From: Lepidodermella squamata
Taxonomy: Eukaryota > Animalia > Gastrotricha
Direction of reading: 5' to 3'
Length of the DNA: 64,000 nucleotides
NCBI GenBank assembly: GCA_047495785.1
Contig: JBLDXI010000046.1
Location: 1,178,001-1,242,000 of the forward strand
The notes under the pieces are model-generated. The model worked only from the letters and a program-made list of their open reading frames with translations, made no database searches and was not told where the DNA came from. This document shows, one piece after another, positions 45,014 through 51,959 of this stretch (the stretch's first letter is position 1; every line of letters starts with the position of its first letter). The position numbers were made by a program, and so were the translations under genes.

Positions 45014-48000
45014 CTAGATATATGGATGATTCGACAACGACGACGGGTTCAAATATGTGTAAGGATACACTCTCTTATCAGCCTCTTCGACTAATGTCCG
45101 CTCCATATTTCGCAACTGAGTGTTCAAATCATCGGCGGCTTTTCTGCAAATCGGGTCCCATAGATACGTGATAGGAAAATGGGCGAATGGGCAAGGAACG
45201 CCGGGTGATAAACATTTGACCGTCACTATTGTTTGCATGACGGTCGAACGAGGTGGCAGGGTGGATAAAACATCAACCTCGTCATACTCGCGTTTTTCGC
45301 TTGGCGGTCGGCCGCGTAATTGAAGCGGGTAGCAGGGCGGGAATGCGTAGTAGTCATACAGTAAATTTTTGTATAACGAATAGCTAATCGTTGCTTCGAA
45401 CAAAATTCCAGTGACAATTTGCATCACGTCATCCGGCCGTCTCACGTTGCCGTTATTAGGCAGGCCGTCCAGGTGAAGCCCGCCGTCGCGTTTTCGATCG
45501 GTCAACATGCGCAGGAACGACTGCAGTTCTTGATCCTGCTGCACTGACGCCCAATCGCGGTAGTAATGCGCGATTATTGTCCGAACATATCTTTCGATCA
45601 TCGAGTACAGCGCGAGTGCATCTTGGCTGAAGCAGTATTGACTGAGAATGTTCGGCTCGTAAATCTGAAGAAAAAATAAAAAGTTTGAATTTTTTAAGGC
45701 GGACTTTTTATTTATATTTTTCGTTTTTTCCCATAAATTTTTCACGAATAATTTCTCCAAGCTAAAAATTCAGCTTTTGCTATACAAATTCTGAAATTTC
45801 GACCATAAGGTGGGAAATAATATTATTGATTTTCAGGCAAAATTTGAGAATTTTTCTGGTTTCAACTGATTTTCGGCAATTTAAGGTGTCCAATTAGCTG
45901 GTGATTTAGGACGCTCATTTGGGGATTCAGCGACCTTGCGAGTTTCATATACTATATGGCTCGAAATTTTAATTAAATCAAATTGTCTTATTTTAGATTC
46001 GAGATTTCTATTCAACTCCCATGCCAATTTTCATTCAAAAATATTGCATCATCACAAAAATATGAGGAGGTGGGCCCAATTACCCCGCGTTACGGTAAGG
46101 GACGAATGTGAATTTTCATTTACATCTAAAATATTTAATGATGTCACTTTAAGAGGTAATTTATCGCTCATCTGGTAATTACAGAATTTCAAACTGGTAA
46201 GTAACAATGTTTACCTAACCTATTCACCCCGGTCAGCATGCGACACTTAACTTGGTGTTATTTTTTTTCTAGAATGCTATGATGGAATTTGCCGCTTGCG
46301 CTTTAGCCTAGATAATTACAAGTGTTGGTGACACTACGCGGTGCAAACTTGATTATCAGTCATTAATCGCAGCAAATGAATCATGATTCACTCGACTCGG
46401 CTCGTTATTTTTACGCAGTCACACACTTTATATCGCGTGGAGATAACCCACACTCGTATTATTAGTTAGTTATGCATACTTTCCCCTTCCCCCTTTCATC
46501 GTATAATGCAAATGCACTCGGCGCGAGCAGGATAAACAACGCAAACATGCACCTTACTGCCATAAACAAGCAGCACCATATTACTGGTATAAAGGATGGT
46601 CAGAATAAAGCAGCGACATGTCACGTCGGTGCCATTGCTCCTATTTACTTACTGCCACCAAAAAGTGCCTGATGATCGTAAAATCTAGTGCACATAACAC
46701 TCACCCCACGCTTGAACATGTTCGCCGGCAGCATCCCGTCGGTGTCGAAACGCCACGAGCTGATACTAAGTGTCAAAAACAAACAAATTAAACAAAAATC
46801 CCACCTTAAAAAAGTCAAAACTAACCCTCGTTTTATCAATTCGATAAAACCCTGGCGACCAAGATACGTGTGCTTATCGACGAAATTTCCCTCTTCAAGT
46901 AACTGCGTAGTTATATTTCGATTAACCGCGAAAATGTCTTTGAAATGTGGCACCAGGATTTTGTAAATCGGATGTGACGGCGAAAAGCAGCGGTGTAACG
47001 CGATAGCAATACCCTCCAGCATTAAATGCGTCCTTCCCAGGTAATTGACTGCGAAACTGTACGTAGCATCGGCGAGGTTGAACCACATTTTAGCGAGAAG
47101 CCAAGTGTATGGCGCATCAGTCGGCATATAAACCGGGTTTTTCTCGCCCGGTTTCTGGAAGAGCTGAATTGCGATAGGAAGCAGATTTTTCTCGCCATCT
47201 CGGTAAAATAATGCAACAGGTGCCGGGAACGGGTAACCCACTGCATTAGTCAAACCGTCCAATATCGATAAATCAACTACGTAGAGCCGTTTCGCTGAAA
47301 GAACGTGTTCCAGCCGCCAGCCTTCGAAGAAAGGACTCAACATTGCTTCGTCCACGTCCATGTTCTCTGGTAATTTATCAATCGTCCTTAGGGCGACTGG
47401 ATTAGGCCCACACAATCGCTGATGGCCAAATTTAACATCTTTTGTCCAGTCGATAACGCCCCACGGGATTGGCACACCGTGGTCGTCTTTATAAAATTCT
47501 TCGAAATCTTCGACCCGACTCCAATCACTGGAATCGTCGGCGACAACTTGTAGCCAAGTTGAGCTTTCGAGGAGGTCGTGTTTAAATTGACTAAATTCTT
47601 CCATGAGCGAATCTGTAAAGCGCTCGAAGTCTGGAATCGACTGAATTCGAGGGGGTAGTTTGTCATCATACCGGTCAACGACGTATAAATCCCTTAGGAG
47701 AGCGAGTTCAGCGTCCCGAACTTCAATACATCTCGAATACTGAGGTAATAGGCCTTCGAAGTTGGTGATTACATAGTGGAAACCAGGTATTAACCAGCGA
47801 CCAACAGGAAATGAAAATAGATTGCGATCTTTCTTATCGTTAAGATCAATCTTTTCAATAAACCATTCAAATTTTATGGAGCCATTTGATTCGGCCCAGA
47901 ATTCGAAAAACTGAACGGCTGTTTCGAGTTTGACTGTATTAATGGTGTAACGCATGTAACCATCTTCTCCTGGTCGGAACTGGCCAATATTTTCGAATCG

Positions 48001-48126
48001 TATCACATCACTCTGGCCGCGCTCGCCGTGGATGATTACACAAATAGTTGTTGATTCCGGTAGATGCTTAATATCACCGCTTTTAATTTTGACAATTAGG
48101 TGGTTCTTGCCGCCACTGTTGCCCAT
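45014..48126 (-). CDS. PLAT + lipoxygenase-fold protein with non-canonical iron ligands (probable pseudo-lipoxygenase)
   Basis: N-terminal MGNSGG (myristoylation-like), PLAT domain (FPVGRW), LOX motifs W.KD..FGHQRLCGPNP, LLPIAIQL, WLLAKMW, HPIYKIL.PH, YPYTYLNP..I C-terminus; exons 46824-48126, ~46704-46765 and 45014-45664 (approx.). Confidence 0.88.
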
Positions 48127-49427
48127 TTTTTTGCTGAAAAAAGGCATCTGATGACTGTGAAATTACTTAATCATTCAAAAGCCTATAACAAGAAAGAATA
48201 TGTTACTTAGCATAAACATGAAGCGGCAAGACGCGCAAATAAGCCGATGAATCAAACGGATACGTAATAGCTAATATCTGCTCTTTCACACTGGGAACCG
48301 ACATAGGTAAGGAATGATCAGTCCGAAACGCATGCTCAGGTGGGTGAAAATGTTGCGTAATTACCGAGACAATCAGGTTCAAGATTCAGCTTTTGGCCTC
48401 TTAAAATATATAGTCACGCTCTTCCTCAATTTTTCATTTTAGCTCTCAAAGATCTACTCATAGTATGTTAATACTAAAATGGCTGTGATTCGAAAATGAT
48501 GAAAACACAAATTTACTACAACGTTGGGGTTGGACTCGCGAGAATGGCATGCAAGTCTGGACCCAGGAGACGAAACTTTTGGTTTTAAGCTTTTAGTAAA
48601 TGATAAATATCATATATCATCGCAGATGCGAGTGACATGATCGTGCTAGATACGCAATCGGAGATTAACAAAAAAGGGCTAGAAAGTTAGGTTCTAGCGC
48701 ATTCATTGCTAACGGCAATTCACAATCAACCAATGCAACTCAAGCAATTCCAATTTAAAAACTAATAAAAACCGGATGGATCGAAGCTTGCTGTTGAATA
48801 TATTTAATATCCAAATATAGCGCTTGAATTCGAAAGGAGAAAGGACAGACAGGTGCGTACGTTGCACCCGCAGCGGACTGGAGAACTTAGATGTCGCACC
48901 TGAGTGAGGTGACGCCAGGTAAGAGAAACTTTTAGAAAAAACGCAAAAAGCTTGATGCTAAAAAATAGCACAACAATTGTTGTATGTTCAGTAATTATAT
49001 CAGGCTACTTAGAGAAAAATTTCGGATCGTCATTTTTTGACGTGAAAAACAATTGGTCCTTGAAATTTCACATTTTGGCGCGGACTGTTTTCTCTGGGTT
49101 TCAAAAGTCCACGTTTGATGTGCTGGCAGTGACGAGCTTCGAGCTTCCCACTGTGTTGTAAGGGTAGCACAAGAGGATTCCGGCTCTCCTTCAATTTCTG
49201 TACTACACGTCATTCTACGTGTCTATTTGTGGCTTCTATCCTATTTAATTGCGTTATGCGTTATTGCGTTTCGTGCATTGTCCACCAGATAAGTCTCGCT
49301 GCCCTTTGTCCACCTGCTCCGCTCTTTTCTTTGTCGGCGATCTCCTTTAAATTTATATTGAATTTTTGTGTGTTTAGATGAAATTAGATGAAACCACCAT
49401 TATAACAGTTGAAATATCAAAATCTTG

Positions 49428-50310
49428 ATGGGTCATATTCTCAGCTTGATTGCATCCGAACATCATGGGAGTAATGCCAATATGGCGGTTACGTCCTTTC
49501 AGGATCTTAGGAAGCTTCCACCAGAGGTGGCACTTCTGATCCTGTCCAAGCTGAATGCCACTGAATTATGTCTAGCTGCTTGTGTGTGGCAAGAGATGGC
49601 GAACTGCGAATTATTATGGCAGAATCTGTGTTATCAGTCATGGGGTTATGTGACCGTTTATTACTCAATGAGCAGCCGGCAGTTAAGCTACAAGAAGTTG
49701 TATATGATTCTTGATGAATGCTCAGTCATGTTCAATGTTGACCCGCAACGAGGACTTCGGATGCTATTTGATCAAAATTTACTTGTGGATGATGCAAAGG
49801 AGATCGCGAAGTTTGTTCATTCTACTCGAACATTGCGGGCGGAAAGCAAGAGACAACTGTTTAAACTGAGGCCTGAGATCCTAGACGAAATCGTCCAACT
49901 GCAGAGCTTCGAAAACGAGTTTCTACCGAATGCTTTGAGGCTGTTCTTCTCATTATGTGGCACACCCAGTGAGAGAGACTCATTTCTATCGCGATTGATT
50001 GATCGTTTTTCAGAGAGATTTCTAGTTTGCAACCCGAAAGTGCACCTCAATAAAGGTAAACTTGAAATTTGTGTCAAGTATGATGATGTTTATAACAATT
50101 TTTCATTCAGATGCTGTATATTTACTTTGCTATTCGTTGATTTTGCTCTCGGTTGATCTCCATAGCCCGCATGTCAAGACGAAAATGAGCAAACGAGAAT
50201 TCATTCGAAATACCCGGAATGTAATTCGAGATTTAGACACTGACTTCGCTGGGCATTTGTACGACAATGTTTGGATTCAAGGCCATCTAGCTCCAAGGCC
50301 TCGTCAATGA
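49428..50310 (+). CDS. FBXO8: F-box only protein 8 (F-box + Sec7-like domain)
   Basis: LPPEVALLILSKLNATELCLAACVW F-box; FENEFLPNALR.FF, DRFSERF, [intron 50056-50110] DAVYLLCYSLILLSVDLHSPHVKTKMSKREFIRN. Confidence 0.92.
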
Positions 50311-50826
50311 CATTTATGCAAAGCTAATCTTTATTGAAATAAACTATTATCATTTTCAAACATCAATCACAGTGCTTGTGTTTTTCTATTTTTGTCAACT
50401 ACTAAAGCCGAAGCTTGCGCCTGTATTGATTATAATGATAGATATATTCTTACAAATCATAGACTATTTAATTTTTCACGTTGATATGTTCGTTACTGTG
50501 CAAAAATTTAGGCGGATTGTTTTCCGGCTATTAGAGCGTGCGTGTGGTTTGTTCACCAAGCACTGATTTCGCGAAAACGGTGATTTTGGATCTATATTAT
50601 TTCTATTATGCATTAGTCAATGAATGAGATATAACTTTTGAGACCCTTCCTTTTAGTAGTTTCCCGTTTCGTTCGTCTGACTGGTTCACCTGGATAAAAG
50701 CGGCTATTATCTTGCTTTTTACGATGTTTGTTATAAAAAAGAATAAACCGGATGCAAGTTAGCCTCCGAAATCAATCGAAAAATAATTGATTAATTTTTC
50801 ATTAGCTCGGGTTTTAATTTAAACAA

Positions 50827-51280
50827 ATGGAAGTTGAAGAATCATCGACCAGCAACACTGCGGTGAGCGATGGCGCTGGAAGTGCGGTCGGAGGCGGTAA
50901 CAAGAAGCGGTTTGATGTGAAAAAGTGGAACGCTGTTGCGTTGTGGTCGTGGGACATTGTTGTCGACAACTGCGCCATCTGCCGTAACCACATCATGGAC
51001 CTTTGCATCGAATGCCAAGCTGACCAGGCGAGCGCAGCCACTGAAGAGTGCACTGTTGCCTGGGGTGTTTGTAATGTAAAGCCAAATTTCAACCAAGTTG
51101 AACCCACCTTAATTTTTTCTCTGAATAGCACGCTTTCCACCTCCATTGCATCGCTCGCTGGCTCAAGACCCGCCATGTTTGCCCGCTTGACAACCGTGAA
51201 TGGGAATATCAAAAGTATAGAAGAAAATGTCCACCTTAATGTTTTAATCGCCTTGTATTTATTTTAGGTACGGAAAGTAA
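50827..51280 (+). CDS. RBX1: RING-box protein 1 (cullin-RING ligase subunit)
   Basis: [49 protein letters not shown]|[29 protein letters not shown]|YGK*; two short introns. Confidence 0.97.
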
Positions 51281-51471
51281 TTTGACGCCGATTTTGTAAA
51301 CGAAATTGCCGGTTTAACCGTTCTCTGCTATCAACTGCAGCGTGAAAGCTCTTTCACATTTCATTCTAATTAAATTAGTTTAAATTCCGGTTGAAATATG
51401 ATAATAAGACAAATAAAGTAAAACTGTTTGTTAATCATCTAATTTTTCGTAGAATTTATTTCAATTGAAAC

Positions 51472-51959
51472 ATGACCGAATACACTAAGCCGTACCAGTT
51501 TGGCGTTCCGGACCGCATGGTCGCCAATAAGTGCCCGGGTAAATTGAGCGAAAACGCGAAAGCTCACCCGTTGGCGGATGGCAAGCCGGCGGAGTTGTTC
51601 TCGGACGAATCGCACCTGCGCCGAGTTCGCGCCGATTTCGGCCTGCACATGGCCCTCCGCCTGGCTATGGAACGCTCCATTGTTTCTGGCGCGTTCAACT
51701 CGCCGTCGGGCATTGGCGGCCACCGCCTTCACACCGGCTGCCTGCCGCCATCGCACGCCCTGGTTTCCAGCTTGACCGGTCAAGATCTCGAATTCGGCTT
51801 CAAGGACGTCCTTAATCGTAAATTATTGAATTTCGTCATCTGCCTTGAATTTTTTTTCGATTTTCAGCTCCTGAATTCGCTGAGCAACTGCGCGATCCTC
51901 ACAATTTCGGCGAAGTCGATATGAAGATGAAAAAGCACGCCAATGCCGGCTTTATTTGA
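51472..51959 (+). CDS. POMP: Proteasome maturation protein (UMP1/POMP)
   Basis: HPL..FGLHMALRLAMER..L.PSH....LTG.D..FGFKDVLN-[intron]-PEFAE..DPH, the UMP1 family pattern. Confidence 0.82.

What the first reader, a model, noticed from the sequence alone, without database searches (positions are those of the whole stretch)
45014..48126. Lipoxygenase with iron ligands replaced: pseudoenzyme or Tyr-ligated metal site
Established knowledge: LOX iron is bound by two His in H-x4-H-x4-H (e.g. ..HE..SHLL.THL), His and Asn in QHAAVN, and the C-terminal Ile. Seen here: ADATYSFAVNYLGRTHL (first ligand His to Tyr, second His kept) and FEATISYSLYKN (His to Tyr, Asn to Lys), with the terminal Ile retained (..NHPYI). 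The frame is otherwise intact, with PLAT domain, splice sites and an MG myristoylation-like start, which suggests purifying selection. Inference: a membrane-targeted, non-catalytic lipid-binding or scaffold protein, or one with novel Tyr/His metal chemistry.
Basis: partly seen in the sequence, partly recalled or inferred. Interest (0 to 1): 0.7.

Follow-up and report, generated by a model that had tools for sequence, protein, structure and literature searches.

The report
Iron-free lipoxygenase-like protein, conserved
A small invertebrate (earlier notes say a gastrotrich) has a single lipoxygenase-type gene that has lost all four iron-holding side chains yet is strongly conserved in three species, so it is most likely a working non-catalytic "dead enzyme", and similar losses sit unremarked in other animals' gene lists.

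Summary
The gene is real. It has three exons on the minus strand (48147..45014, about 677 aa) and encodes a PLAT domain plus a lipoxygenase (LOX) domain.

**Ligands.** Alignment to solved LOX structures and to 99 relatives shows that all four side-chain iron ligands are replaced:
- His to Ser
- His to Tyr
- His to Tyr
- Asn to Lys

The second-sphere Gln (to Leu) and the Gly/Ala "Coffa" site (to Ile) are also replaced. The C-terminal Ile is kept.

**Selection.** Two orthologues exist, one in metagenome contigs (77% aa) and one in a Logan contig (85% aa). The 77% orthologue carries the same Ser/Tyr/Tyr/Lys; the other is a 5' fragment that ends before the sites. Silent sites are saturated (pS 0.85-0.90) against pN 0.10-0.16, so this is not a pseudogene.

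**Context.**
- It is the only LOX catalytic domain found in the 121-Mb genome.
- The "MG" start is probably internal. An upstream ATG (MPFF..) is conserved in all three species, and one of them has no internal Met.
- Eleven of 99 related cluster representatives, from ticks, a mite, a scorpion, flatworms, a nemertean and amphioxus, also lack two or more ligands, apparently through independent losses.

The parts
46826..48147 (-). Exon 1, from the upstream ATG (48145-48147, MPFFSKK..). The internal ATG of MGNS is at 48124-48126. Encodes the PLAT domain and the first half of the LOX domain.
   Evidence: ORF and Pfam; donor G|GTTAGT at 46825; the upstream ATG is conserved in L001 and L029.
47785..48093 (-). 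PLAT/LH2 domain. It is divergent: 26 bits against a cut-off of 23.
   Evidence: PF01477 covers residues 19-121 of the ORF from 48147. The loop aligned to N-D-F-E of relatives reads F-R-P-G.
47026..47070 (-). Former iron-ligand helix, DATYSFAVNYLGRTH. The Ser codon 47056-47058 replaces the first ligand His. The Tyr codon 47041-47043 replaces the second ligand His. The His codon 47026-47028 is the conserved non-ligand His.
   Evidence: Alignments to 11R-LOX 3vf1 and 8R-LOX 3fg1, to 13 relatives and to 99 representatives. The motif is identical in the orthologue.
46912..46914 (-). Ile at the Gly/Ala (Coffa) position that sits by the oxygen path in active LOXs.
   Evidence: This column is Ala in 52 and Gly in 29 of 99 representatives. 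Both the window and the orthologue have Ile.
46766..46825 (-). Intron 1: 60 nt, in frame, without a stop codon. It is absent from the orthologue and from all relatives.
   Evidence: GT..AG with a pyrimidine tract. The orthologue reads straight through..KRGIKTWRFD...
46705..46765 (-). Exon 2, 61 nt (..ISSWRFDTDGMLPANMFKRG).
   Evidence: Matches the orthologue and relatives; donor GTGAGT at 46704.
45665..46704 (-). Intron 2, 1040 nt.
   Evidence: The acceptor ..ttttttcttcag ends at 45665. The orthologue has a 73-nt intron at the same place.
45014..45664 (-). Exon 3: second half of the LOX domain, the C-terminal Ile codon (45017-45019) and the stop codon (45014-45016).
   Evidence: PF00305 positions 457-602; PDB matches down to the C-terminus.
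45359..45382 (-). Second former ligand motif, YSLYKNLL. The Tyr codon 45380-45382 replaces His. The Lys codon 45368-45370 replaces Asn. The Leu codon 45359-45361 replaces the second-sphere Gln.
   Evidence: Alignment to 5mee and to relatives. A 20-residue stretch around the motif is identical in the orthologue.

Best explanation
This is a selectively maintained, iron-free member of the lipoxygenase fold: a pseudoenzyme.

Shown:
- The gene is intact and spliceable.
- All four side-chain metal ligands, the second-sphere Gln and the Gly/Ala oxygen-path residue are replaced, while 79% of the family's most conserved columns are kept.
- The same replacements are fixed in the one orthologue that covers the sites, a species so diverged that silent sites are saturated.
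- It is the only LOX catalytic domain found in the genome, so it cannot act by modulating an active paralogue.

Inferred:
- It cannot bind the catalytic iron, and so cannot abstract hydrogen from or oxygenate fatty acids.
- The Lys that replaces the Asn ligand supplies the positive charge that iron gave. It would pair with the still-buried C-terminal Ile carboxylate, which would explain why ..NHPYI is kept. The two Tyr and the Ser fill and hydrogen-bond the former site.
- The conserved ex-active-site helices (83-90% identity between species) suggest that the hydrophobic channel is still used. The likeliest use is to bind a fatty acid or other lipid, or to present a surface to a partner protein.
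- The protein is probably cytosolic rather than acyl-anchored.
For: - Domains.
- Ligand mapping against solved LOXs and relatives.
- Orthologue L001-L004 (77% aa): same Ser/Tyr/Tyr/Lys, Ile at the Coffa site and ..NHPYI end; syntenic UMP1, RBX1-like and F-box/Sec7 neighbours.
- Third species L029: 85% aa over 211 codons, a fragment that ends before the ligand sites.
- Selection: pN 0.145 against pS 0.90 over 672 codons, and 0.10/0.85 and 0.16/0.87 for the other pairs.
- Introns lie at different places in each species, yet the frames stay open.
- 21 of the 23 departures from conserved columns are shared with the orthologue, and the ligand losses are enriched (p about 0.001).
- The tree shows a long stem (1.6 changes per site) followed by short tips (0.26 between species), the pattern of a shift followed by constraint.
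- No second LOX catalytic domain turned up in the 121-Mb assembly, searched with the Pfam model and with a canonical LOX.
- 22 metagenome LOX loci all keep the first His pair, and the 9 in which the second motif was recovered keep His..Asn.
- A basic residue sits at a ligand position in 6 of 11 other ligand-poor LOX representatives.
Against:
- The Lys-carboxylate pairing and the survival of the channel are therefore untested.
- Two Tyr plus a carboxylate could in principle still hold Fe(III) or another metal.
- The genome searches give lower bounds, so a very divergent second LOX cannot be excluded with certainty.
- Conservation of the core helices is also what a purely structural role would give.
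- The K/R pattern was noticed post hoc, and some of the alignments behind it are uncertain.
Confidence: 0.7

Rival explanations
1. A LOX-fold enzyme with a new metal centre. The two Tyr and the C-terminal carboxylate, with Ser or water, would bind Fe(III), Mn or another metal and support a different redox or isomerase chemistry.
For: The Tyr, Tyr and terminal Ile are strictly conserved in the orthologue that covers them. Tyr-rich iron sites exist in other protein families (my own knowledge: intradiol dioxygenases, transferrins).
Against: - No His is left in the site.
- A conserved Lys occupies a ligand position and would compete with a cation.
- The second-sphere Gln and the oxygen-path Gly/Ala are also lost.
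- Other animal lineages lose the same site with quite different residues such as Gly, Trp, Arg and Phe. That fits loss of the site, not redesign.
Confidence: 0.08
2. A metal-independent catalyst or carrier that still works on lipids in the old channel, for example handling dietary or microbial oxylipins, rather than a purely binding or scaffolding protein.
For: The channel-forming helices are the best-conserved parts. It is the only LOX-fold gene in the genome.
Against: No candidate catalytic residues have been identified, and no precedent was found in the papers searched.
Confidence: 0.1
3. A decaying pseudogene or unexpressed relic whose open frame survives by chance.
For: All catalytic residues are lost, and no RNA evidence was obtained.
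Against: Silent sites are saturated while the protein stays 77-85% identical. The frames are open in three species despite intron gain and loss. The derived residues are themselves conserved.
Confidence: 0.03
4. An N-myristoylated, membrane-anchored LOX-like protein, translated from the internal ATG after spliced-leader addition at the TTTTTTCAG just upstream.
For: - The internal ATG has a strong context (A at -3, G at +4) in the window and in L001.
- 36 of 99 related LOXs start with MG, and the nearest relatives start MGNS or MGNCC.
- Earlier notes report spliced-leader acceptors just before start codons in this genome. I did not test this.
Against: - The upstream ATG and the MPFF.KK peptide are conserved in three species.
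- Similarity begins exactly at that ATG.
- L029 has Ser-Gly instead of Met-Gly, so there the upstream ATG must be used.
Confidence: 0.25

Closest known systems
Canonical animal lipoxygenases with solved structures: coral 11R-LOX (3vf1), coral 8R-LOX (3fg1), human 5-LOX (3o8y), human ALOX15B (4nre)
   Same: The same PLAT plus helical catalytic-domain architecture, alignable end to end (E 3e-44 to 1e-35 for exon 1). Shared features include the WLLAK helix, PIAIQL, SHP and the C-terminal Ile.
   Different: All four side-chain iron ligands, the second-sphere Gln and the Gly/Ala oxygen-path residue are replaced. The PLAT loop that aligns with the N-D-F-E-type loop is also changed.
Tubulanus polymorphus (nemertean) 'allene oxide synthase-lipoxygenase protein-like' XP_074651881.1 (P0022)
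   Same: The nearest non-orthologous relative found among 1.84 billion representatives: 39% identity over the whole of exon 1, a similar length of 676 aa, and an MGNS.. N-terminus.
   Different: It keeps His, His, His, Asn, Gln and the terminal Ile, so it looks like an active enzyme.
Ligand-poor LOX-like predictions in other animals: Ornithodoros XP_064482113.1, Tropilaelaps OQR69394.1, Centruroides XP_067140418.1, Macrostomum PAA89542.1, Heterobilharzia CAH8480629.1, Tubulanus XP_074652900.1, Branchiostoma XP_078689697.1
   Same: Full-length PLAT-LOX proteins with one to three ligand positions replaced. Most have an MG start, and several carry Lys or Arg at a ligand position.
   Different: They use different replacement residues. 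They do not group with the window's protein with support, and the tree needs at least 9 separate origins. Most keep at least one or two ligands. All are annotated automatically as lipoxygenase-like, and I found no study of them.
ALOXE3 (eLOX3) and fungal manganese LOX
   Same: LOX-fold proteins that depart from ordinary iron dioxygenase function (my own knowledge; Mn-LOX 5fno appears).
   Different: Both keep a full metal-ligand set and are catalytic, as a hydroperoxide isomerase and a Mn dioxygenase. Here the ligand set itself is gone.

Membership tests
Lipoxygenase family (Pfam PF00305 with an N-terminal PLAT domain) | PLAT domain followed by the LOX helical domain, over Pfam's cut-offs | tested here: met
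   PF00305 scores 84.8 and 40.6 bits (cut-off 23.6). PF01477 scores 26 bits (cut-off 23).
Lipoxygenase family, as an active enzyme | Two ligand His in the H-x4-H motif on the long helix | tested here: not met
   Ser and Tyr occupy these columns, which are His in 85 and 88 of 99 representatives.
Lipoxygenase family, as an active enzyme | Third ligand His and the Asn/His/Ser ligand in H-x3-N | tested here: not met
   Tyr and Lys occupy these columns, which are His in 88 and Asn in 81 of 99 representatives.
Lipoxygenase family, as an active enzyme | C-terminal Ile (or Val) whose carboxylate binds the metal | tested here: met
   The protein ends ..NHPYI in the window and in the orthologue.
Lipoxygenase family, as an active enzyme | Bound Fe or Mn and PUFA dioxygenase activity | not testable with these tools
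   Needs purified protein, ICP-MS and activity assays.
Pseudoenzyme (a conserved non-catalytic homologue of an enzyme) | Clear homology to an enzyme family with the catalytic residues missing | tested here: met
Pseudoenzyme (a conserved non-catalytic homologue of an enzyme) | Maintained by purifying selection across species | tested here: met
   pN 0.10-0.16 against pS 0.85-0.90 (saturated) in three pairwise comparisons. The derived residues are shared.
Pseudoenzyme (a conserved non-catalytic homologue of an enzyme) | Expressed as RNA and protein | not tested
N-myristoylated protein | Gly at position 2 of the translated protein | tested here: inconclusive
   An in-frame ATG 7 codons upstream is conserved in three species, and L029 lacks the internal Met. 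That argues against the feature, but the 5' end of the mRNA was not seen.

The most novel reading that the evidence does not exclude
Iron-free LOX-fold proteins would be an unrecognised, repeatedly evolved class of animal proteins. Loss of the metal site has happened independently in this animal's lineage (probably gastrotrichs), arachnids, flatworms, a nemertean and amphioxus. It often comes with a Lys or Arg put where the iron sat, and the fold is then kept under selection for a lipid-binding or signalling role. In this animal such a protein is the only LOX-fold gene left.
Probability: 0.35. Interest if true: 0.6.

Novelty: new variant of a known kind. Interest (0 to 1): 0.45.

Why it matters
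Lipoxygenases are treated as obligate iron (or manganese) dioxygenases, and automatic pipelines label every homologue "arachidonate lipoxygenase-like". Here a homologue with no metal-binding side chains is strongly conserved and is the only family member in its genome. That shows the fold has a selectable function apart from catalysis.

It also warns against inferring eicosanoid or oxylipin pathways in invertebrates (ticks, mites, flatworms) from such annotations.

If the retained pocket binds lipids, these proteins would be natural "substrate-trap" versions of LOX. They could help in studying how the fold recognises fatty acids and which non-enzymatic roles have been proposed for mammalian LOXs (mentioned in PMC9682198).

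Tried and rejected
- **Structure of the metal pocket.** This needs the three exons joined. All searches were done exon by exon by reference, and dN/dS was pooled from per-exon codon pairs.
- **Word-based search with exon 3**. It found only the known orthologue fragment.
- **Metagenome scan**. It gave 22 LOX loci, all with the canonical first His pair (the second motif was recovered in 9, all His..Asn), and no further orthologue.
- **Literature.** Five searches for LOX pseudoenzymes or ligand-less LOXs found nothing relevant. A search for the sample accessions found nothing.
- **Rejected: pseudogene.** Selection rules it out.
- **Rejected: regulator of an active paralogue.** No paralogue was found.
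- **Rejected: a single ancient "dead LOX" clade shared with ticks and flatworms.** The tree gives no supported grouping, and starred branches force at least 9 origins. Long-branch effects make this tree weak evidence either way.
- **Organism.** I did not verify it. "Gastrotrich, probably Lepidodermella squamata" comes from earlier notes only.
Full report
**1. What is there**

The region holds one gene on the minus strand. The large ORF 48147..46645 and the ORF 45760..45014 carry PF01477 PLAT (26 bits) and PF00305 Lipoxygenase (84.8 and 40.6 bits).

Reading the sequence gives three exons:
- Exon 1: 48147..46826, donor G|GTTAGT.
- Intron 1: 60 nt, in frame, 46825..46766.
- Exon 2: 46765..46705, donor GTGAGT.
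- Intron 2: 1040 nt, 46704..45665, with a pyrimidine tract and CAG.
- Exon 3: 45664..45014, ending ..NHPYI and TAG.

All searches were done exon by exon by reference. The joined protein was never built or submitted, so no fold of the whole protein was made.

**2. The ligand positions**

Exon 1 aligns to coral 11R-LOX (3vf1, E 3e-44), coral 8R-LOX (3fg1) and human 5-LOX (3o8y).

In those alignments the ligand pair y-H-qmit-H-llrc-H-l of 11R-LOX lies over Y-S-FAVN-Y-LGRT-H-L. This means:
- The first ligand His is Ser.
- The second ligand His is Tyr.
- The retained His is the third, non-ligand His of the motif.

Exon 3 aligns to Cyanothece LOX 5mee (E 5e-24) and to ALOX15B and 8R-LOX. There pq-H-aav-N lies over IS-Y-SLY-K, so His is Tyr and Asn is Lys.

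A MAFFT alignment with 12 ligand-intact relatives, and another with 99 full-length representatives, give the same columns:

| Position | Canonical residue, count of 99 | Window |
|---|---|---|
| Ligand 1 | His, 85 | Ser |
| Ligand 2 | His, 88 | Tyr |
| Non-ligand His | His, 93 | His (kept) |
| Ligand 3 | His, 88 | Tyr |
| Ligand 4 | Asn, 81 | Lys |
| Second-sphere residue, three after the Asn | Gln, 81 | Leu |
| Coffa position | Ala 52, Gly 29 | Ile |

No ligand His is left.

**3. Targeted loss, not general decay**

Among 112 columns that are at least 11/12 identical in the intact relatives, the window protein keeps 89. The 23 it changes include all four ligands and the Gln. The chance of that is 0.0014 for the four ligands and 0.00025 with the Gln, by the hypergeometric count.

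The fold's signature stretches (PIAIQL, TWLLAKMWFN, SHP, FPP.YP) are intact.

**4. Orthologues and selection**

*The 77% orthologue.* The word search found one close relative, P0001 (77% identity), on four ENA metagenome contigs.
- Its locus has the same neighbours in the same relative order: UMP1, an RBX1-type RING gene and an F-box gene, divergent from the LOX gene. In the window the corresponding genes lie at 49425-51924, where the F-box gene also carries a Sec7 domain.
- It lacks the window's intron 1, has a 73-nt intron at the place of intron 2, and has an extra intron near the 3' end.
- It encodes the same Ser, Tyr, Tyr, Lys, Leu, Ile and ..NHPYI. Of the 23 departures from conserved columns, 21 are identical in both species.

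*A third species.* P0028 / L029 is a genomic Logan contig that is 85% identical over 211 codons. It has yet another intron position. It is a 5' fragment and ends before the ligand sites.

*Nei-Gojobori counts, pooled from per-exon codon pairs:*

| Pair | pN | pS |
|---|---|---|
| Window vs L001 (672 codons) | 0.145 | 0.90 |
| Window vs L029 | 0.10 | 0.85 |
| L001 vs L029 | 0.16 | 0.87 |

. Silent sites are saturated, so dN/dS cannot be estimated, but it lies well below 0.2.

In a small tree the two long sequences share a stem of 1.6 changes per site and differ by only 0.26. That is a burst of change followed by constraint. A pseudogene is excluded.

**5. The N-terminus**

Seven codons upstream lies another ATG (MPFFSKK-MGNS..).
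- The same ATG and peptide occur in L001 (MPFFGKK-MGNS..). Three of the four nucleotide differences there fall at third codon positions, and similarity begins exactly at that ATG.
- In L029 the peptide is MPFFKK-SGSS.., with no internal Met at all.

So the conserved start is the upstream one, and the Gly is internal.

The inner ATG has the better context and is preceded by TTTTTTCAG. Earlier notes of this scan say the genome (probably the gastrotrich Lepidodermella squamata) adds a spliced leader at acceptors just before start codons. I did not test this, so use of the inner ATG in this species is not excluded (I give it about 25%).

The nearest relatives do start MGNS or MGNCC, and 36 of 99 representatives start MG. 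An acylated N-terminus may therefore be ancestral and masked here.

**6. Genome context**

The Pfam LOX model finds only the two exons of this gene in the 121-Mb, 151-contig assembly. A canonical LOX (P0022) used as query matches this locus over its whole length and elsewhere only through its PLAT domain, residues 10-125.

Within the limits of those searches, the animal has no ligand-bearing LOX. The common pseudoenzyme role of regulating an active paralogue is therefore unlikely.

**7. Wider picture**

The exhaustive HMM search gave 2104 relatives. I ran it because the claim of restriction rests on absence.
- The best non-orthologue is Tubulanus polymorphus XP_074651881.1: 39% identity, fully canonical, with an MGNS start.
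- No further orthologue with Ser/Tyr/Tyr/Lys turned up in that search, in the two word searches or in the metagenome scan. The 22 metagenome loci all keep the first His pair, and the 9 in which the second motif was recovered keep His..Asn.
- Unexpectedly, 11 of 99 full-length representatives have two or more ligand positions replaced. They come from Macrostomum, Heterobilharzia, Centruroides, Tropilaelaps, a second Tubulanus gene, Branchiostoma and unnamed Logan assemblies. A tick (Ornithodoros) protein has one ligand position replaced.
- One unnamed representative, P0105, also has all four replaced (Gln, Lys, Asn, Ser).
- Eight of the 11 start MG, and six carry Lys or Arg at a ligand position.
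- In a quick ML tree they do not form one supported group. Starred branches force at least 9 origins, and the window protein sits unresolved among them. These fast-evolving sequences invite long-branch artefacts, so I treat "independent losses" as likely but not proven.
- Five literature searches found no description of ligand-less or pseudoenzyme LOXs. A review mentions possible non-enzymatic roles of nuclear mammalian LOXs (PMC9682198).

**8. How it most likely works**

*Shown:* loss of every metal-binding side chain, of the second-sphere Gln and of the small oxygen-path residue; retention of the fold and of the C-terminal Ile; strong purifying selection on the new residues.

*Inferred:*
- There is no iron, and hence no hydrogen abstraction or oxygenation.
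- In active LOXs the Asn ligand and the C-terminal carboxylate bind the same metal ion, so their ligating atoms lie a few ångströms apart (established knowledge of LOX structures). A Lys at that position can reach the place of the metal and neutralise the buried carboxylate. That would explain both the conserved Lys and the conserved ..NHPYI end. The recurrence of Lys or Arg at ligand positions in other ligand-poor lineages is consistent with this, but I noticed it post hoc.
- The ex-ligand helices and the PLAT-catalytic junction are the best-conserved parts (83-97% in 30-residue windows). I therefore favour a retained pocket or interface function, meaning lipid binding or a protein scaffold. 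The same pattern would arise from structural constraint alone.

My probabilities:
- About 0.8 that the protein is iron-free, non-dioxygenase and functional.
- About 0.35 that its function is specifically lipid binding in the old channel.

**9. Verdict**

This is a real and clearly ligand-less LOX homologue, a new variant of a known family and not a new kind of system. Interest is moderate:
- The single case is a typical pseudoenzyme story.
- The correction of the ligand assignment removes the "novel Tyr/His chemistry" attraction.
- The sole-copy status and the repeated, unremarked losses in other animals make a testable small theme.

Noticed in passing
P0034, P0039, P0042, P0056, P0059, P0061, P0069, P0078, P0096, P0105 (database proteins): LOX-like predictions with replaced iron ligands occur in Macrostomum, Heterobilharzia, Centruroides, Tropilaelaps, Tubulanus and Branchiostoma (two or more positions replaced) and in Ornithodoros (one). 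All are auto-annotated as lipoxygenase-like, and they appear to be independent losses.
   Followed up: partly
99 full-length LOX representatives: 36 of 99 invertebrate-type LOX representatives begin with MG, and several begin MGNCC. This suggests an N-myristoylated or palmitoylated LOX subfamily that I have not seen described.
   Followed up: partly
Ligand columns of ligand-poor LOX representatives: Six of eleven representatives with two or more ligands replaced carry Lys or Arg at a former ligand position, as the window protein does. This may be a cation mimic for the lost iron. The pattern was noticed post hoc and is not corrected for shared ancestry.
   Followed up: partly
window 46766-46825; L001 7718-7790 and 8327-8386; L029 654-706: The three orthologous genes have short introns (53-73 nt) at largely different positions; only one is shared, and there the window's intron is 1040 nt. 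So intron gain and loss is fast in this lineage while the frames stay intact.
   Followed up: partly
window 49425-51924 (+) and L001 3206-5379: A conserved gene neighbourhood lies beside the LOX-like gene: an F-box gene (with a Sec7 domain in the window, FBXO8-like), an RBX1-type RING-H2 gene and UMP1/POMP, three ubiquitin-proteasome genes in a row.
   Followed up: no
window 48127-48150: Two acceptor-like sites, CATCAG just before the first ATG and TTTTTTCAG before the second, fit the spliced-leader acceptors that earlier notes report for this genome. Which one is used decides the N-terminus.
   Followed up: no
G000 C20:2418641-2427497: A dense run of PLAT-domain matches, at least ten within 9 kb, probably a PLAT-repeat (LOXHD1-like) gene. 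It was seen only as a by-product of the paralogue search.
   Followed up: no
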